Shown: in pieces, positions 1 to 40,835 of the stretch | Position numbering within the stretch: the stretch's first letter is position 1 | How the letters are laid out: the number at the start of each line of letters is the position of its first letter | NCBI GenBank assembly: GCA_038496445.1 | Contig: JALMLS010000079.1 | Location: forward strand, 1-64,000 | Direction: 5' to 3' | Source of the DNA: Trichosphaerium sp. ATCC 40318 | Lineage: Eukaryota > Protista > Tubulinea | DNA: 64,000 nucleotides | The notes under the pieces: generated by a model | Databases searched by the model: none | Told to the model about the DNA's origin: nothing | Seen by the model: the letters and a program-made list of their open reading frames with translations, nothing else | Translations under genes and position numbers: made by a program

Positions 1-1260
1 TACAAGGGTGTCATGAAAAATTCAGTAGTATCTCTTTGTGAGATGAAAGACACGTGTTATTCATTACTATCTGGCTGTCACAATATAAAAGCGGAGAGTT
101 TACATTATCGGTATATAACAGATAACGACTTGAAACAGCTCTCAGGTATTCATTCAATTAACCTTGGAAGTTGCCGTGAAATAACAGATGAAGGAATAAT
201 AGCACTTGAGGGGATTCATACAATAAATCTTGCGCATACTGAAGTGACTGATAGGTCACTTAAAGCACTTAAAGATGTTCACACAATCAATCTCTTTTGT
301 ACTGATATAACAGATCAAGGTATAAAAGAACTAAAAGGCACTCAAAGTATTAATCTTCAATGTACTGAAGTGACAGATAAATCACTTTCAGCACTAAGGA
401 ATGTACATACAATTTCTCTTCCGTCAACAATTACAGATGACGGTATCAAACTTCTCAAGGCACCTTACAATGTTAACCTTGATCGATGTAATAGAATTAC
501 AGATGAAGGTATCAAAGCATTGGCAAACATACATACTATAAGCCTCTGGGGCAGTACAGTTACAGATGAAGGAGTAAAACCACTTGCCGGAGTGCATGAA
601 ATCAACCTTTGTAGTTGTGAACATATAACAGATGAAGGTATCACGGCACTCAAAGGTGTTCATACAATAAACCTCAACAACACCTTAGTGACTGATGCAG
701 GCATTAAGGCACTTGAGGGAGTTCATAAAATCAGCCTATGTAATTGTGAAAATATTACAGATGAAGGTATCAAAGCGCTCAAAGGTGTTCATACAATAAA
801 CCTCAACAACACCTCAGTATCAAGTGAAGGAGTCAAAGCGCTCAAAGGAGTTCACACAATCCATCTTGTTAACACTTTAGTAACAGATGAGGGTGTCAAA
901 GCACTTGGTGGCGTTCACACTATTGACCTTTCTAAAGCTGCAATTACAGATGAAGGAATCAAGTGTTTGGCAGGTGTACACAATATCAAATTGTATAGGT
1001 GTAAGGATGTGACTGATGAAGGCATTAAAGTGCTTTCAGGCGTTCATACAATAGATCTTAGTTGTTGCAAACAAGTTACAAATGAAGGTATTAAAGCCTT
1101 AGCAGGTGTTCATACAATCAACATTGAGTACACGTCAGTGACAGATGTCACAGCATTACAGGGTGTCCGTTTCATAAACGTGAGACATGTCTATGATGGT
1201 ATAGATGCTCTAAAAGAAGCAGTGCCAAACGGTTTTACGATACCTTCACGAAAGAATTAG
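1..1260 (+). CDS. F-box/leucine-rich-repeat protein, LRR region (5' end lies upstream of the window)
   Basis: Intronless ORF with about 15 repeats of 24-25 aa (GVHTINLxxTxVTDEGIKAL). The frame is open from base 1 (YKGVMKN), matching the post-F-box segment YKGIMTN of the paralog at 19686-21303. Confidence 0.85.
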   Translation, partial: YKGVMKNSVVSLCEMKDTCYSLLSGCHNIKAESLHYRYITDNDLKQLSGIHSINLGSCREITDEGIIALEGIHTINLAHTEVTDRSLKALKDVHTINLFCTDITDQGIKELKGTQSINLQCTEVTDKSLSALRNVHTISLPSTITDDGIKLLKAPYNVNLDRCNRITDEGIKALANIHTISLWGSTVTDEGVKPLAGVHEINLCSCEHITDEGITALKGVHTINLNNTLVTDAGIKALEGVHKISLCNCENITDEGIKALKGVHTINLNNTSVSSEGVKALKGVHTIHLVNTLVTDEGVKALGGVHTIDLSKAAITDEGIKCLAGVHNIKLYRCKDVTDEGIKVLSGVHTIDLSCCKQVTNEGIKALAGVHTINIEYTSVTDVTALQGVRFINVRHVYDGIDALKEAVPNGFTIPSRKN

Positions 1261-19685: not shown

Positions 19686-21303
19686 TTACAATACCATAGA
19701 GGTTGGTACTTCATGAAACAGCTTTTTATGGCAACTTCTTCTGCCATGCTTTGAGTAGCGATAGGCTTTACCCTTAAAGACCTGTTTTAAAGCATACTGG
19801 ATAAAAACATCATTGAAAGTTACAACATGAACGTCCTCTAGTGCTCTATTGCCTATTCTATATCGTGCAGAAATATCGACGGCATAGAAAATACGGTTAT
19901 GGAATAAAGCACGAATTTCTTCGTGTGTCACATTTTCACACTCATTAAGGCCAATAGTATGAACACCAGCAAGTGCTTCAACACCTTTTTTGGTTACTAA
20001 AGTGCCATCTAGATTAATAGCATAAACACCAGCAAGCGCTTTGACACCTTCATCAGTAACAGAGGTATGTGCAAGATCAATCGCATACACACCAGCGAGC
20101 GCTTTGATGCCTTCATCTGTAACAGACGTGTCCCGAAGATTAATAACATGAACACCAGCAAGCTCTTTTACAGCGTCATCTGTAACAGAGGTGTTGTCCA
20201 GGAAAATAGTATGTGCACCTTTCAGTACTTTAATACCCTCATCTGTCACGTTTTTGCAATGACTAAGGTAGATTGTATGAACTCCTCCTAGCGCTTTGAT
20301 AGATGAATCTGTTAGGGAAGTATAAGAAAGATCAATAGCATGGACACCACACAAATACTGTATGCTTTCATCTGTTATGTATTTACATTGTGAAAGGTCA
20401 AGTGTATGGACTCCTTTCAATGATTTTATACCTTCATCTGTTACTCTACAATCTGCAAGGCTAATGTCATGAACACCTGACAGCGCTTTAATACCTTCAT
20501 CTGTTACGGAAGTATAAGAAAGATCAATAGTATGAACGCCACTCAAATGTTTTATGCCTTCATCAGTTATTCGTTCGCACCTTTTGAGACGAATTGAACG
20601 AACACCAGAAAGTTCTTTGAGATCAAAATCATTGATGACTGTGTTTGGTTTTGTATAACTGGTAATACGTGTTGGAACAATATGTCTACAGCCTTGTAAT
20701 AGTGAATACAAACTATTGTTCTTGACTTCCATAGTGACAATAGTATTGGTCATTATACCTTTGTACTGTCTGATCTTTATAATATCTGGAATGTCATATA
20801 TATAAACCCTTTTATATCCAACAATATCATGGATTATATCAGCCATTAAACGACATGATTGGGCAACCTTAAATCTTGTCTTTTGTTCAGTATGATGTAG
20901 AATACTTGAAATAACTTCTTGAGGAAAGTTGATAATATTAACTTGTTCACGGCTTGTTGTATTTGTTCTTTATTGTTATGTTAGTAGGTACGTATTTGAT
21001 ACTATTTAAGGCGTACTCTCTTCTTTGTTTTATCTTTGGCAATAGCATGTCCTCCGATTGTGCTACACGTGCTTGTTGGTGGGTAGAATGTACTTTGTTC
21101 TCTTTTGTACCATTACTGCTTGTATTTTTGAAGAGGTATTGGTCTAGTTGTTGCATAAGGCTCTTGTTTGAAACGTCTAGGATACTTTCAAGTTTGTTTA
21201 CGAACTCTTCACGTTGTTTTCCGATGATTTTACTAAAAGTTTCTGCATGCTTATTGCAATAGTATGTGATTGCTTGATCAACTGAAACGCGAGGATAATT
21301 CAT
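19686..21303 (-). CDS. F-box/LRR protein, full length, one intron (20968-21016)
   Basis: ORF 20947-21303 is joined by a GTACGC...TACTAAC...AAG intron to an F-box (IINFPQEVISSIL...RFKVAQSCRLM) and about 11 LRRs. Confidence 0.85.
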
Positions 21304-35000: not shown

Positions 35001-35921
35001 TGACAAATCCTTTCTAAACCCACGTGAAACCCACGTGAAATCAGTAAAAAAAAGGTACCATTTGCATCACTTACGTTAACACTTAATAACTTGGCAACAC
35101 CCAGATTTACAAGCTTGCACAGTTTGACACCACAAATGTAAAATAAATAAGCACCACTTAAAACGGTTACACTCCATGATCCGTTGACGCCCATATTAGA
35201 TTAGTTCAAGACCCAATGTAGCAAAGAGTAAGACAAATGAAATCAAAAAAAATTCCTTCTTTGTACTAGAATGGACTCTTTGTGAAAATTCACGGACTTT
35301 GCGTTATACGAAACACAGTTACTTTGCCATACGAATTCTTGATCATCTTGCTTATTATAATGTACTACTAATAAATAGCCAACGTAGTATAACTCATAAT
35401 GTCGTTCCATCATCACCACTATCTCACTCAGTTTGTAAAAAAACCAAGCTTTTCTCTTTCTTTTTTGTTGCTCACCTTTCTTTTGACATTCAAATAGGAA
35501 CATAGATACTGTTCTCTTATGCTTTAACTTATACACAGCGTCAGTTCCAATAGTGTAAGTTTGTATACAGCTCTCCTTTGGGCATAAACCATGCAGCTCT
35601 CTAATCAAAAGATCCAAGGATTTGTTCAAATTCTGACATTCCGGATGATACTTTCAGCCACCTCACGGTTCTGTGTTATATAGGTTCCACAGTATTAGTT
35701 ACATAACTAGCGTTTCCACGTGAATATGCCAAACGTTGGAATCTCTGATGCGTTTTCGTGAGTCTTCTATTGATACGTCACATTCCAAGTCCTGTGAGTG
35801 TGTGTGGCAGTATTAAAACTTTGTTTTGCGACAAGGTTGATTACAAGATATTTTGACACAAAGAAAAGTTATTACCGTTTTTTGTTTTCTCATCTCTGTT
35901 TTTTATTCTGACTTGGACACT

Positions 35922-37762
35922 ATGAGCAAACGAAAGAATACACCTGAAGAGGACGAAGAAGAGCAAGCCATTAAACAATGGCGCGTGCGCAAACTAATAA
36001 AAAAATTGGAACAAGCAAAGGGGTAATTTCATTGTGTAAAGCATTGTGGTGTTGACGCCAAGCGTAGGAATGGTACTTCGATGATTTCTCTTATTATCCC
36101 ACCAAAAGATCAAATTTCACGCTACAGCAAGATGCTTGCCGATGAATTCGGTACTGCGTCTAATATTAAGAGTAGAGTAAACAAATTGTCTGTGCTCAGC
36201 GCTATTACATCGACACAGCAAAAACTTAAGCTCTACCACCGCGTACCAGGTACAACCCTCTTTTCTCGCGAGTATTTCGCAATTTGTTTCAAATTAGCTC
36301 ATTTTTGTAGAAAATGGATTGGTAATATACTCTGGTACCATCGCTATGGATGATGGTAAAGAAAGAAAGGAAACAATCGATTTTGAACCACATAAACCTA
36401 TCAACACTTCGTTGTACCTTTGCGATAACAAATTTCATACCGAGGTACCAGAAATACGCCTATTCAGCTGATTAGAAAAGTCACAATTTTATTTGTACCG
36501 AGTAGTTCCATCCCTCACACTATTTTATAACAAAACGCACCTACTAACGGCTTGTTTCAGCCACTAAAAGAGCTTCTTGAAGCAGACGAAAAATATGGTT
36601 TCATTATCATGGATGGTCAGGGTACTCTATTCGGTACATTGTCTGGTAACACCAAAGCTGTACGTTGTTAAAAAATTCAACAAAAAAGAATTGTTTTTTC
36701 TTTTTTTTTTTTTTTCCTTTTTTTTCTTTACTGACAAGCGTGCGTCCCTAGGTCCTTCAAAAAATCAGCGTTGATTTGCCAAAGAAGCATGGTCGTGGTG
36801 GACAATCTGCTGTGCGTTTCGCCCGTCTTCGTGTAGAGAAAAGACGTAATTACGTCAGAAAAGTGTCCGAGTTGGCCGTTCAACACTTTATTTCCAACGA
36901 CAGAGTGAGTAAAATTTATTTTTTTTCTAACACCTTCTGATCTCTTTCTAAATAGCCAAACGTATCCGGACTAGTACTCGCTGGTCTCGCCGAATTCAAG
37001 AACGTATTGGCAACATCTGATCTTTTAGATGGTCGTCTTAAGGAGGTTATCTTGAAGATTGTTGATTGCAGTTATGGTGGAGAGAACGGTTTCAACCAGG
37101 TACACCTACTCGCGCTCAATTAGTAATTTCCAAGAGACTTATGGATTGGTTTGTAGGCTATTGAACAATCAGCTGATACTCTGAGTAACGTCAAGTTCAT
37201 TGCTGAACAAAAGTTGATTGGCAAGTTCTTTGAAGAGATTGCTAAAGATACAGGTAAAATTTGCTATGGTATCCGCGAAACCATGCTCGCCTTGGAAGCT
37301 GGAGCAAGTACTGTACGCCAGCAAAGCATATACACTTGTTTGCTCACGTTCGTTTAGACTGTCATCATCCACGACAACTTGGAGATGAACCGTTACCAAT
37401 TCAAAGACAGGGAAACTGGTGAGATGGTAGAAAAGTTCTATACCCCAAAACAAGAAGAAAAGGACAAGAACTTTAAAAACAAGGATGGCGTCAACTACGA
37501 CATTGAATCCGTAGAGCCAATTGTCGAGTACTTTGCTGATAACTACAAGCAATGGGGTACTACCTTGCAATTCGTTACCGATCGCTCCCAAGAGGGCGCA
37601 CAATTCGTCCGAGGATTCGGAGGTACGTACCTGTTTTCTATCGACGGGATTTCGGCCTAATATGGTTTTTTTTAAAAAGGTATCGGTGCTCTTCTTCGTT
37701 GGAGAATGAACTTTGACGATTACGAACAAGACGAAGAGGAGGTCTGGGAATGGGATCTTTGA
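35922..37762 (+). CDS. ETF1: Eukaryotic peptide chain release factor 1
   Basis: [39 protein letters not shown] and GFGGIGALLR. Ends [12 protein letters not shown]. Confidence 0.97.
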
Positions 37763-37886
37763 CAATATCTATTTGACGTACTCGCCCCAGCCTTAAGCCA
37801 TTATTTCAACTTGTCAATTGTACAAGAGCACCGAGCAAACCGCTCTCAAAAGGCTGGGGAACCTGGAATAGTGGCAGCCATAAATG

Positions 37887-37962
37887 GTACAAGAATGCAA
37901 AAAACACATTCTTTTTTGTAAATGAGGCAGTACATTTTCTAACTTGTGTTTTCGTCCTTTAG
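37887..37962 (+). other. Predicted 76-nt intron in the eRF1 3'UTR
   Basis: G|GTACAA donor (same hexamer as donors used in eRF1, SRRM1 and GPATCH3), CTAAC branch point at 37939-37943, pyrimidine tract, TTTAG acceptor. Confidence 0.65.
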
Positions 37963-38339
37963 AACACCACGTTCGGCGTTATGTGATAAGTGCACCAATA
38001 ATATCGCAATGAAATCAACTTCCAAACAACTCACAACAAAATAAAAAGCATTTTTTGTCTCAATTTTGAATTCGTTGTTTGGCGTGACCTGATTTAAGCG
38101 ATACAAAACTCGGTCAGAGATACTTTTTTTTGGTGTTCACAAACAAATTAATGTTAGTGCAGTTTTGCTTTTATGGATACCGACCCCACTTGACGAAAAA
38201 ACCATCCCACTTAAACACTGAAACCCTCTAGTACGTAGGTTGCACCTTGTGGTAATCAGTAGCCCCGAAATCATTACACAATTGTTAAAACAAAGGATAT
38301 ACCTTACAGACGCATTTACACATTGTGCAGCCCTCTATC

Positions 38340-40835
38340 ATGGTGGTACACGCACATATCCGTTTTTGGATGTGTTTTTATTTTGCGGCCATGTTTTTAC
38401 ACAACGCACACAGTTGCTTAACAGATCCTCGTACGTCAGTTTTTTTTGAAAGTGGTCTAATAGGAGCGAAAATACGATTGTTATTGCATAATGGCGTGAC
38501 AACTCTAATTGGGAAATACTGTACTGACGCTAACTGTAGCAGCGCCTGATGAGGTGGTAGTCTTTGACGACTTCTTAACGAATGGTTTTACAATCGAGGC
38601 AATTGGCGATAGAACGGTGGTACAGTGCGTACTTAATAATAGTTGGACATGTTCTAATACGTCAAAAGGGCCCTCGTCACAAATGATAACACCCAGTGCA
38701 GCGGCACCACTACGTTATCTGTAGATCTAAAACTTAGTACCCCCTGCGGGATACGTGTTGTCTGTCCATTTGTACGTCCACTTCGTTGATTGGCGTAATA
38801 ATTTACCTGATCATGTCTGCTAGGACACCAATTGCATCACAAATGGATCTGTAATAGTATTCAACGTTGGTATTGGAGGTAGCATGTCGTTTAACATATC
38901 TTTGCAAGATAATAGTAGCCTCTATGATGTGTCTATTGGCCCTTTCATGGTTAATACTGCCTCCGAAGTAAAAGTAAGAAAAGCGACAATAGCGGAGGTT
39001 GACTGTTGCTTACAGTACTCGTAGATGATTGAGGTAATAGATGGGAATTTTTCATCGTTCTCTTTGATAGCAATGCAGCCTGGCCGATTGAACATGGATG
39101 ATGTTTTCATTAAAGGAGGTGAGTTATCAACGCGTTGAATGCGATCCTGTAACACGACATTGTAGCTTCACTTCCTGATGTAGTAACACATAAGAGCACG
39201 GCTTGCCCTCAAACAAATGCCACAGGTATGGATGTTGGTTATAACAGTGTTAATTGGTTGTTAATACTCAAGCAGTACTATTCAACTCTGAGCCGACCGC
39301 AGATGTAACTTACTTTGTGGATAATGGTGTGCTAACGTACGTCTTATCATTTTCTGTACCCTCATAAACGAACTGACTCCTGTGAAACACAGTGTACCTT
39401 ACAAGAGTAACGCTTCAAACATATACTGTGGATCGTCGTCAATTTATTGGCAACCAGTCTCACAAGAATCATTGAGAATGGCGTGCAACAACGTACATGC
39501 ATTCTTCAGTTTTGGTTTTTTAATGATTGATCTCTGTACATAGATGTGCATAAGCAATACTTCAATTATCGAGTTCGAAATATACTCTACCCGAGATCTA
39601 GAGATTTTTGTGAAAGTTGACGGAGTTGGTTCAGATAAAACCTTTAATTTAGTCGCCTATAATTGGACCCACGTGAGTTTCTTGGATCGCTCGTTCAATT
39701 TTAACATTTCCACCCTCGTTTCAGATACGATACTCCGCTGCTGATGAGGGTTTGGCATTGAACTCAATGCAAATGTTACTAAGAGTAGGGGATATTCCTA
39801 TTCCCCACCAAGTTTTTTTGGATAACATTGTCGCTACAGGTGCACCATCTACTCTGTTGTACTATTGACTCAAAGATAAGATTTTATTGCCGATGTTCTT
39901 CCACCAACACCTGAACCGACTCCTCAGTCGACAGCTGAACCAACAGCTGAACCAACACCTGAACCGACACCTCAGCCAACAGATGAACCAACAGCTGAAC
40001 CGACAGCTGAACCGACACCTCAGCCAACAGATGAACCAACAGCTGAGCCGACAGTAGCTCCAGTAGGGCCTATTGTTGCGCCCTCAACAGCTCCAGATTC
40101 ATCTCACCAAGTGCTCATCATTACGAACGCAACGTTTGTTGTATCAGAGCCCATAGTGATCGCCGGTGCGTGCCTTTACCTTATGACGTTGTAACGTCTA
40201 AGTATCGCCTAGGTGGCTTGATACTGGACAATAATGCCACCATTGTTTTTAATACTCCTAATACCATCGTTGTATCCGGTTGTCCAGAGTTACGTGGAAG
40301 AATAAATGTTACATTCGCACTAGGAACCAACTCAACAACAGATTTGATACGATGGCTAGGTACTCTTGAACTAACATCTCCTTCTTCTCTGACCTGTACA
40401 CCAAGGTCAAAGTTGCAACGTTAGTAAGCCAGAAACATTCTTTAATGGTGCCAACGACGAATGCGTGAGTGCCACTATAGAACTGAGCAAAGCAGGTATG
40501 TAGTTTGTTACAACCAGAAATTTTTGTTAATATTTGTTCAACAGAAAAGGCACTATCGTTGAGCATACAAGATACTTGCAAAGAAGATTCACAAACGGTC
40601 GTGCGTAAACAGTTTTTAAGAATTTTCCTGTTTAATTCCCGGTTAGATCATTATTGCAGCAGTTGTAGCTTCAATACTTGTTGTAATAGCGATAGGTATA
40701 ATCTTGTTGGTATCGTACAATGTTCGCGTTCAAAATATAGTATTCCCCCACCGTGCAGCTTGGCGTATCCGCCGGTACAGGCAAAAACAGGGTAGAATAG
40801 CCACTATTGAAGAGGTGGAAAATCCAAAACAATAA
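38340..40835 (+). CDS. Type I cell-surface glycoprotein with beta-rich ectodomains, mucin-like stalk and TM helix
   Basis: Signal-like N-terminus, many NxS/T sites, PTxE repeats, TM IIIAAVVASILVVIAIGIILLVSY, basic cytoplasmic tail. Confidence 0.75.
39901..40060 (+). repeat. 12-nt-unit coding repeat (PTPE/PTAE/PTDE/PTPQ)
   Basis: ccaacagctgaa, ccgacacctcag and similar units in tandem. Confidence 0.9.

What the first reader, a model, noticed from the sequence alone, without database searches (positions are those of the whole stretch)
37760..38046. eRF1 mRNA carries a complete readthrough/NMD autoregulatory cassette
Seen: (i) the stop is UGA-CAA (37760-37765); (ii) the frame stays open after it, for 52 codons unspliced (TAA 37919-37921) or 57 codons spliced (TGA 38010-38012); (iii) a well-formed 3'UTR intron (37887-37962) puts a junction 124 nt after the stop, with the next in-frame stop beyond that junction; (iv) an AATAAA signal near 38040 makes the 3'UTR long for this genome. 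Known: UGA-C is the leakiest stop context; junctions more than 50-55 nt past a stop trigger EJC-dependent NMD; readthrough-plus-NMD feedback on eRF1 is described for plant eRF1-1 and Neurospora. Inference: high eRF1 gives efficient termination and NMD of its own mRNA, while low eRF1 gives readthrough that clears the junction and stabilises it. I know of no description in this kind of protist, so it may be an ancient or convergent termination homeostat.
Basis: partly seen in the sequence, partly recalled or inferred. Interest (0 to 1): 0.88.

Follow-up and report, generated by a model that had tools for sequence, protein, structure and literature searches.

The report
Amoeba eRF1 readthrough/NMD feedback 3'UTR
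The gene for the protein that stops translation (eRF1) in this amoeba-type protist ends in a leaky stop codon followed by an open frame and a genuinely spliced intron in its tail, the design by which plants and the mould Neurospora let eRF1 tune its own level; whether it does so here is untested.

Summary
All sequence observations hold. A 9-exon, 438-aa canonical eRF1 (NIKS, GGQ, three Pfam eRF1 domains) ends in TGA-CAA. The frame stays open for 52 codons unspliced and 57 spliced.

Spliced transcript contigs from four public runs confirm all eight coding introns. Three of them also lack the 76-nt 3'UTR intron (37887-37962), which puts a junction 124 nt after the stop. The longest contig ends near 38064, about 19 nt after AATAAA.

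This matches the published eRF1 readthrough/NMD design of Arabidopsis eRF1-1 (TGA-CAA-TCA, intron 130 nt after the stop) and Neurospora.

Each feature alone is only modestly unusual, with the open frame at P 0.03-0.24 depending on the criterion. Supporting points:
- TGA-C is rare in other eRF1 genes: 2 of 42 outside a probably fungal group where it is 19 of 19.
- A perfect 10-bp stem lies after the stop (P about 0.006).
- The UTR has no strain differences, where 4-6 are expected.

Readthrough, NMD sensitivity, the genome's base rate of 3'UTR introns and conservation in relatives could not be tested. No close relative was found.

Verdict: a probable (about 0.5) new member of a known kind, in a third distant lineage.

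The parts
35922..37762 (+). eRF1 coding region, 9 exons: 35922-36022, 36068-36249, 36311-36444, 36561-36659, 36752-36904, 36956-37099, 37157-37312, 37358-37622, 37680-37762. It encodes 438 aa with NIKS and GGQ.
   Evidence: Model. All 8 introns are spliced in transcript contigs of 4 runs. Pfam eRF1_1, eRF1_2 and eRF1_3 hit the exon pieces. It is 62-67% identical to eRF1 of other eukaryotes.
37760..37768 (+). Stop codon and context TGA-CAA-TAT (UGA-C; CAR triplet as in the TMV and plant eRF1-1 signals; preceded by CTT).
   Evidence: Arabidopsis eRF1-1 is TGA-CAA-TCA. TGA-C occurs in only 2 of 42 eRF1 3' ends outside the fungus-like group.
37763..37886 (+). Post-stop open frame up to the exon junction (41 codons plus 1 nt). 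No in-frame stop, and no Pfam family.
   Evidence: There are no differences among four strain-level transcript contigs, while the CDS has 8 synonymous ones.
37769..37774 (+). 5' arm of a weak outer helix (CUAUUU) in the minimum-energy fold. It starts 6 nt after the stop codon and pairs with 37866-37871.
   Evidence: The helix is predicted only, and the whole-fold z-score is -1.29 (not significant).
37785..37794 (+). 5' arm CCCCAGCCTT of a perfect 10-bp G+C-rich stem.
   Evidence: A stem this long occurs in 0.6% of shuffles and in 4 of 516 native 124-nt tiles.
37850..37859 (+). 3' arm AAGGCTGGGG of the 10-bp stem. It ends 27 nt before the 5' splice site, next to the place where an EJC would sit (about 20-24 nt upstream of the junction).
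   Evidence: The EJC position comes from established knowledge and is not tested here.
37866..37871 (+). 3' arm (GAAUAG) of the outer helix.
   Evidence: prediction only.
37887..37962 (+). 3'UTR intron, 76 nt: 5' GTACAAGA, branch-like CTAAC at 37939-37943, 3' TTTAG. It contains the in-frame TAA 37919-37921 that ends the extension in unspliced RNA.
   Evidence: It is spliced out in contigs of X1, X5 and X7. X2 runs 20 nt into it. Its motifs match the coding introns.
37963..38064 (+). Terminal 3'UTR exon. The approximate 3' end of the mRNA is near 38064.
   Evidence: The X1 contig extends 102 nt past the junction.
38010..38012 (+). Next in-frame stop (TGA) of the spliced mRNA, 48 nt beyond the junction and about 52 nt before the 3' end.
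38040..38045 (+). AATAAA poly(A) signal, about 19 nt before the end of the longest transcript contig.

Best explanation
The single canonical eRF1 mRNA of this amoeba-type protist carries an RT-NMD 3'UTR of the kind shown experimentally for plant eRF1-1 and Neurospora erf1. Shown here: the mRNA ends in UGA-CAA, and a 76-nt intron is spliced out 124 nt downstream. The frame after the stop stays open across that junction to a second stop 48 nt beyond it, close to the poly(A) site. Inferred: splicing leaves an exon-junction complex about 100 nt after the stop. When eRF1 is abundant, ribosomes terminate efficiently at UGA, the complex stays on the mRNA, and UPF-dependent decay lowers eRF1 mRNA. When eRF1 is scarce, near-cognate tRNAs read through the weak UGA-C stop. 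The ribosome then strips the complex and terminates near the poly(A) tail, so the mRNA is spared. The result would be negative feedback on termination capacity. The conserved 10-bp stem between the stop and the intron may tune readthrough or the marking of the junction. That last step is speculation.
For: The gene model and the stop context are, and the eRF1 domains. The 3'UTR intron is spliced in 3 of 4 transcript contigs from independent studies, and the 3' end lies near 38064. All three structural criteria of the published plant circuit are met: a readthrough-type stop, an intron more than 50 nt after the stop, and a next stop in a position that does not induce NMD. The numbers are nearly identical to Arabidopsis (TGA-CAA-TCA, 130 nt; PMC5397192). 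The Neurospora circuit is cited by title in PMC10578600. In a survey of 61 distinct eRF1 3' ends from metagenomes, TGA-C with a long open frame marks one coherent, probably fungal group. In that group 19 of 19 loci have it, with a frame-0 median of 88 open codons against 35 and 15 in the other frames. Elsewhere it is rare: 2 of 42, and 31 of 42 use TAA. A labelled Xylariaceae eRF1 ends TGA-CAG with 48 open codons. The closest eRF1 found (67% identical) ends TGA-CGA. The 10-bp stem has P about 0.006. All 8 strain differences in the CDS are synonymous, and the UTR has none where 3.8 (X7 alone, P = 0.023) to 6.3 are expected at the synonymous rate. No SECIS or other Rfam element offers another reading of the UGA. 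Untested leads from the scan's notes: retrotransposons of this genome with gag-pol joined by UGA-CAA-UUA (s1-397193, s1-409639), and a UPF2 gene (s1-409703).
Against: No readthrough, NMD or eRF1-dependence data exist for this organism. The context matches CARYYA only in CAR plus one position, and the two bases before the stop are TT rather than the A-A that favours readthrough in plants. The open frame alone is weak evidence: P is 0.24 for the minimum the model needs and 0.03-0.11 for what is seen. The gene has one intron per about 165 nt of CDS. If 3'UTR introns are common and tolerated in this genome, the intron is unremarkable and EJC-type NMD may not operate. The base rate could not be measured. 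One run (X2) shows RNA continuing unspliced into the intron. The whole-region fold is not more stable than shuffles (z = -1.29), and the 10-bp stem starts 22 nt after the stop, further than typical readthrough stimulators (my knowledge, not tested). No close relative was found, so conservation is untested.
Confidence: 0.5

Rival explanations
1. The 3'UTR intron is real and does lower or modulate eRF1 mRNA, through NMD or regulated intron retention. Readthrough plays no protective role; the UGA-CAA context and the open frame are incidental.
For: The intron is spliced in three runs and RNA continues unspliced into it in one, so isoform choice could itself be regulated. The open frame has a chance probability of 0.03-0.24. 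The context is only a partial CARYYA match. In plants eRF1 level also changes NMD intensity directly (section list of PMC5397192).
Against: TGA-C is rare among eRF1 genes outside the group where the RT-NMD design is expected (2 of 42), and TGA-CAA reproduces the Arabidopsis signal. The second stop sits just where readthrough would rescue the mRNA.
Confidence: 0.22
2. Coincidence: this is an ordinary, constitutively spliced 3'UTR intron in a very intron-dense genome without EJC-dependent NMD, plus a chance open frame and a chance UGA-C. There is no feedback.
For: The intron density is one per about 165 nt in this gene. EJC-linked NMD is known to be efficient only in some lineages (PMC5397192 introduction; PMC6173133). 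Each sequence feature is individually only mildly improbable.
Against: The coincidence must fall on the one gene for which this exact design is known in two other kingdoms. Also against it are the extra 10-bp stem (P about 0.006) and the absence of strain differences in the UTR (P 0.002-0.02).
Confidence: 0.18
3. Programmed readthrough makes a functional C-terminally extended eRF1 isoform (52 or 57 extra residues), and the intron merely chooses between two tails.
For: The frame is open in both spliced and unspliced RNA, and the UTR sequence shows no strain variation.
Against: The extension hits no Pfam family. The two isoform tails differ after residue 41. In plants the extended eRF1-1 appears not to act in termination (section title in PMC5397192). 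No homologous extension was found, and it could not be searched as a joined protein.
Confidence: 0.06
4. The UGA is recoded as selenocysteine through a SECIS element in the 3'UTR. The genome is said to have selenoprotein genes.
For: Scan notes mention SECIS elements elsewhere in this genome, and a stable stem lies after the UGA.
Against: No SECIS or other Rfam family matched at gathering score in the window, or at E up to 10 in 37600-38200. The stem lacks a recognisable AUGA/GA kink-turn core by eye. eRF1 normally ends at this position in other eukaryotes.
Confidence: 0.01

Closest known systems
Plant eRF1-1 RT-NMD autoregulatory 3'UTR (Nyiko et al. 2017, PMC5397192)
   Same: It is the canonical eRF1 mRNA. 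The stop is followed by CAA (Arabidopsis TGA-CAA-TCA; here TGA-CAA-TAT). A spliced 3'UTR intron lies well past the 50-nt limit (130 nt in Arabidopsis, 124 nt here). The next in-frame stop is placed so that a readthrough ribosome removes the junction mark and ends near the poly(A) site.
   Different: Plants have the full CARYYA and A-A before the stop; here only CAR plus one base, with TT before the stop. In Arabidopsis the next stop is less than 25 nt upstream of the junction; here it is 48 nt beyond it. Plants keep a second, unregulated eRF1 type; whether this genome has one is unknown, as the other eRF1-like genes noted by the scan look aberrant. Function is shown in plants but not here.
Neurospora crassa erf1 (Kurilla et al. 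2020 FEBS Lett; Zhang and Sachs 2015 for EJC-dependent NMD through 3'UTR introns). Neither paper is held; both are known from citations.
   Same: It has the same logic: a leaky stop, a spliced 3'UTR intron and NMD. The fungus-like metagenome group (19 of 19 TGA-C, median 88 open codons) and a labelled Xylariaceae locus (TGA-CAG) show the same sequence signature as this locus.
   Different: The fungus-like loci mostly use TGA-CGG or TGA-CGT and have longer extensions. The lineage is different. I could not read the paper's details.
Bacterial RF2 (prfB) +1 frameshift autoregulation, and the two recoding events proposed for giant-virus release factors
   Same: A release factor senses its own concentration at a stop codon in its own mRNA (discussion of PMC5397192).
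   Different: There the rare recoding event makes the functional protein. Here normal termination makes it and recoding only protects the mRNA. There is no internal stop or frameshift site in this CDS. A separate eRF1-like gene with a +1 site is reported elsewhere in this genome (note s1-372427, not tested).
TMV-type (CARYYA) and UGA-C type stop-codon readthrough signals, with 3' stem-loops in some viruses
   Same: UGA followed by C and by the CAA triplet. A predicted extended helix has its base 6 nt after the stop.
   Different: Positions +7 to +9 (UAU) do not fit YYA. The strong 10-bp helix starts 22 nt after the stop. No covariation test was possible.

Membership tests
eRF1 RT-NMD autoregulatory 3'UTR (plant eRF1-1 / Neurospora erf1 type) | The mRNA encodes the canonical class-1 release factor eRF1 | tested here: met
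   438 aa with NIKS and GGQ. Pfam eRF1_1, eRF1_2 and eRF1_3 hit the exon pieces. It is 62-67% identical to eRF1 of animals, plants and protists.
eRF1 RT-NMD autoregulatory 3'UTR (plant eRF1-1 / Neurospora erf1 type) | Main stop codon in a readthrough-promoting context (plants: stop + CARYYA) | tested here: inconclusive
   UGA-CAA-UAU: UGA-C and CAR are met, and YYA is met at 1 of 3 positions. TGA-C is rare in eRF1 genes outside the fungus-like group (2 of 42). Actual leakiness was not measured.
eRF1 RT-NMD autoregulatory 3'UTR (plant eRF1-1 / Neurospora erf1 type) | A spliced intron in the 3'UTR more than about 50 nt downstream of the stop | tested here: met
   The 76-nt GT..AG intron 37887-37962 is removed in transcript contigs of 3 of 4 runs. 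The junction lies 124 nt after the stop.
eRF1 RT-NMD autoregulatory 3'UTR (plant eRF1-1 / Neurospora erf1 type) | Next in-frame stop in a position that does not induce NMD (near or beyond the last junction, close to the poly(A) site) | tested here: met
   TGA 38010-38012 lies 48 nt beyond the junction and about 52 nt before the contig end.
eRF1 RT-NMD autoregulatory 3'UTR (plant eRF1-1 / Neurospora erf1 type) | The 3'UTR intron makes the mRNA a UPF1-dependent NMD target | not testable with these tools
   This needs UPF1 or UPF2 depletion or translation inhibition. Only a note of a UPF2 gene in this genome exists (s1-409703, unverified).
eRF1 RT-NMD autoregulatory 3'UTR (plant eRF1-1 / Neurospora erf1 type) | Readthrough occurs, protects the mRNA and falls as eRF1 rises | not testable with these tools
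   No Ribo-seq, proteomics or reporter data. The single read-laying run gave contigs only.
eRF1 RT-NMD autoregulatory 3'UTR (plant eRF1-1 / Neurospora erf1 type) | Conservation of the 3'UTR design among related species | tested here: inconclusive
   No close relative was found. Within the species there are 0 UTR differences where 3.8-6.3 are expected. The nearest eRF1 (67% identical) ends TGA-CGA, but its contig stops 9 nt later.
SECIS-directed UGA-to-selenocysteine recoding | A SECIS element in the 3'UTR | tested here: not met
   No Rfam match at gathering score in the window, and none to any SECIS family at E up to 10 in 37600-38200.
RF2-type frameshift autoregulation | An internal in-frame stop with a shift site inside the release-factor CDS | tested here: not met
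   The spliced CDS is one uninterrupted 438-codon frame, confirmed by transcript contigs.

The most novel reading that the evidence does not exclude
The readthrough/NMD homeostat on eRF1 is not a plant and fungal peculiarity. It would be either an ancient eukaryotic device retained in at least three supergroup-level lineages, or a solution evolution has reached at least three times with almost the same geometry (UGA-CAR, junction about 125-130 nt after the stop). In this amoeba it would be one of several termination-factor feedback loops, since scan notes report a +1-frameshift eRF1 paralogue and an eRF3-like gene with UGA-CUA. That would make the organism a natural system for studying how cells set termination capacity.
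Probability: 0.2. Interest if true: 0.8.

Novelty: new member of a known kind. Interest (0 to 1): 0.6.

Why it matters
How eukaryotic cells keep termination efficiency constant is known for only two lineages. Both use the same trick: the release factor's own mRNA is destroyed when termination is efficient and spared when it is not. A third instance with the same geometry, in a distant amoeba-type protist, would show that the design is either very old or strongly favoured. It would also imply that exon-junction-dependent NMD operates in this lineage, where it has not been studied. It gives a compact, directly testable reporter of about 300 nt for readthrough and NMD in a non-model protist. If the functional tests fail, the locus becomes a warning that the sequence signature alone does not predict the circuit.

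Tried and rejected
1. Finding close relatives, to test conservation of stop context, open frame, intron and stem, failed by every route.
- A word-indexed protein search with the longest exon found nothing in the allowed length range.
- The exhaustive search of 50%-identity representatives gave at most 51% identity over the whole exon.
- The metagenome scan gave 80 eRF1 loci, the best 55% identical.
- Two profile searches, with our exon pieces laid on a scaffold eRF1 (a mollusc sequence, then a divergent one), returned only the scaffold's or generic eRF1s. The best match to ours was 67%.
- Several exon-piece alignments had to be discarded because MAFFT scattered pieces.

2. Naming the organism failed. 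An exact look-up of a window ORF found nothing, cluster names of the nearest eRF1s were uninformative, and the run accession of the nearest eRF1 appears in no held paper. 'Amoeba' rests on the scan's earlier notes only.

4. SECIS and other known RNA elements: none found.

5. Predicting 3'UTR introns in the fungus-like metagenome loci by motif alone was inconclusive without RNA, as was labelling that group by BLAST.

6. A search of this window for the UGA-CAA-UUA retrotransposon signal reported elsewhere in the genome gave no copy. No other TGA-C with long frames on both sides looked meaningful.

7. The whole-region RNA fold is not significantly stable.

8. Locus L063 comes from a human-gut metagenome. 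I did not take it for human DNA, but left it out of all analyses as a precaution.
Full report
**The gene.** Reading 35400-38700 and joining exons at GT..AG borders gives a 9-exon gene on the + strand (coordinates under parts). It encodes an uninterrupted 438-aa protein with the NIKS and GGQ motifs. The exon pieces hit Pfam eRF1 domains 1, 2 and 3. The protein is 62-67% identical to eRF1 of animals, plants and various protists. It is the canonical class-1 release factor.

**The observation.** The CDS ends ...GAT CTT TGA CAA TAT. TGA is at 37760-37762 and CAA at 37763-37765.
- The frame after the stop is open for 52 codons to TAA 37919-37921 in unspliced RNA.
- With 37887-37962 removed, it is open for 57 codons to TGA 38010-38012.
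- The other two frames close after 10 and 3 codons.
- The candidate intron is 76 nt: GTACAAGA...CTAAC (37939-37943)...TTTAG. The eight coding introns use the same 5' GTAC/GTRA, CTAAC/CTGAC and YAG elements.

- All are spliced at the eight coding introns exactly as modelled, so they derive from RNA.
- Three of them (X1, X5, X7) also skip 76 nt with GT..AG ends at 37886|37963.
- The fourth (X2) continues 20 nt unspliced into the intron and ends there, so unspliced RNA also exists.
- The longest contig (X1) runs 102 nt beyond the junction, to about 38064. That is about 19 nt after AATAAA (38040-38045).

So the 3'UTR intron is real, the junction is 124 nt after the stop, the spliced 3'UTR is about 226 nt, and polyadenylation does not occur before the intron. 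Contigs cannot give isoform ratios.

**How unusual is it?** From local base composition, shuffles and all 6645 stop triplets in the window:
- Staying open to the junction (41 codons): P = 0.07-0.11.
- Staying open for 57 codons: P = 0.03-0.06.
- The model only needs the frame to stay open to within about 50 nt of the junction (about 23 codons), which has P about 0.24.

The frame alone is therefore weak evidence. UGA-C is expected for perhaps 6% of genes from composition, and UGA-CAA for under 1% (my arithmetic; the genome's real usage is not measured). The frequency of 3'UTR introns in this genome is unknown. That matters, because this gene has one intron per about 165 nt of CDS. The argument for significance is that all three features coincide in the one gene where this combination is a known regulatory design.

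**Comparison with other eRF1 genes.** No close relative could be found (see tried and rejected). The metagenome scan gave 80 eRF1 loci, of which 61 have distinct 3' ends.
- One coherent group of 19 has C-termini ending ...EF[FY]SDDDDI and comes mostly from soil and plant-litter samples. It is probably fungal, but I could not label it. All 19 have TGA-C (mostly CGG or CGT). Their post-stop frame is open for a median of 88 codons, against 35 and 15 in the other two frames.
- The other 42 show no such signal: 31 use TAA, only 2 use TGA-C, and the frame-0 median is 18.5 codons against 12 and 15.
- A labelled Xylariaceae genome locus ends TGA-CAG with 48 open codons.
- The nearest eRF1 to ours (67% identical, a Logan transcript contig) ends TGA-CGA, but the contig stops 9 nt later.

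So the readthrough signature is detectable and lineage-specific. It is not a general property of eRF1 genes, and this locus carries it.

**Extra signs of function in the 3'UTR.**
A stem this long occurs in 0.6% of shuffles and in 4 of 516 native tiles.
- In the minimum-energy fold the stem is extended by a weak outer helix whose base lies 6 nt after the stop. The fold as a whole is not more stable than shuffles (z = -1.29).
- The four contigs differ from the window at 8 CDS positions, all synonymous third positions. They differ at no position of the UTR they cover. At the synonymous rate, 3.8 differences are expected for X7 alone (P = 0.023) and 6.3 summed over runs (P about 0.002, not fully independent).
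- No SECIS or other Rfam family is present.
- The extension peptide hits no Pfam family.

**What is known.** Nyiko et al. 2017 (PMC5397192) showed the following in plants.
- eRF1-1 mRNA has a readthrough stop context (Arabidopsis TGA-CAA-TCA).
- It has an NMD-inducing 3'UTR intron 130 nt after the stop.
- Its next stop is in a position that does not induce NMD.
- Readthrough protects the mRNA, and eRF1 lowers readthrough and raises NMD.

Kurilla et al. 2020 reported the same for Neurospora (title cited in PMC10578600; the paper is not held). Zhang and Sachs 2015 showed EJC-dependent NMD through 3'UTR introns in that fungus (cited; not held). Searches of the held literature found no such description for amoebae or other protists. 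NMD core factors are ancient and present in amoebozoans and Naegleria (PMC5709506).

**Interpretation.** The locus meets every structural criterion of the RT-NMD design, with geometry nearly identical to Arabidopsis. I rate the full feedback mechanism at about 0.5.
- Shown: the gene, the stop context, the open frame, the splicing and the 3' end.
- Inferred: leakiness of UGA-CAA-UAU, EJC-type NMD in this organism, and dependence on eRF1 level.

Rivals:
- An intron that regulates without readthrough: 0.22.
- Coincidence in an intron-dense genome lacking EJC-NMD: 0.18.
- A functional extended isoform: 0.06.
- Selenocysteine recoding: 0.01.

Leads from the scan's own notes, none tested here:
- Retrotransposons of this genome that join gag and pol by UGA-CAA-UUA. 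This would be an internal control for the leakiness of UGA-CAA.
- A UPF2 gene with candidate 3'UTR introns.
- A +1-frameshift eRF1 paralogue.
- An eRF3-like gene with UGA-CUA.

**Verdict.** This is a probable new member of a known kind in a third, distant lineage. Interest is about 0.6: a specialist would find the repeat of the same geometry notable and easy to test, but the mechanism itself is already described. The organism was not identified here; 'amoeba' comes from earlier notes.

Noticed in passing
window 37785-37794 / 37850-37859 (outer helix 37769-37774 / 37866-37871): A perfect 10-bp G+C-rich stem lies between the eRF1 stop and the 3'UTR intron. Its 3' arm ends just before the expected EJC site. 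It is significant as a stem (P about 0.006), but the whole fold is not (z = -1.29).
   Followed up: partly
window 36152, 36161, 36164 (codons 62, 65, 66, at the NIKS motif): Three different synonymous third-position differences lie within 13 nt, each in a different run (X1, X5, X2). All 8 CDS differences among the runs are synonymous, and the 3'UTR has none.
   Followed up: partly
L026-L076 (19 metagenome loci, e.g. L067:4418, L057:4418, L072:3863): A coherent, probably fungal group of eRF1 genes all end TGA-C(GG/GT) and are followed by 31-136 stop-free in-frame codons. This is a clear sequence footprint of the published fungal eRF1 readthrough design in environmental data.
   Followed up: partly
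L082:3088 (Xylariaceae sp., GCA_023159215.1): eRF1 ends TGA-CAG-GTCAGT. The deposited 507-aa gene model appears to splice around the stop into the downstream open frame, so the annotation may have turned a readthrough/3'UTR-intron region into coding sequence.
   Followed up: no
L077:597-837: One eRF1 of the fungus-like group has no stop at the usual position, and its frame continues for about 45 further codons.
   Followed up: no
L081:1351-1362 (Logan contig of SRR5256710): The eRF1 most similar to this one (67% identical, organism unknown) also ends in TGA-C (TGA-CGA). The contig ends 9 nt later.
   Followed up: partly
window 36686-36732 (intron 4 of eRF1): A long T-rich, pyrimidine-rich tract lies inside a coding intron. 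The read tool flagged it as a repeat where reads seem cut.
   Followed up: no
window 13-1260 (+) and 19686-20846 (-): Two long single-exon ORFs (415 and 386 aa) are made of LRR_6-type leucine-rich repeats. The second is not on record as an exact protein in the public collection.
   Followed up: partly
same genome, other pieces (notes s1-372427, s1-404207, s1-406575, s1-404388): The scan's notes report several other release-factor-related oddities in this genome: a +1-frameshift eRF1 paralogue, an eRF3-like gene with an in-frame UGA-CUA, F-box fusions to dead eRF1, and a GGQ-only paralogue. Together with this locus they suggest an unusually elaborate termination-factor repertoire.
   Followed up: no
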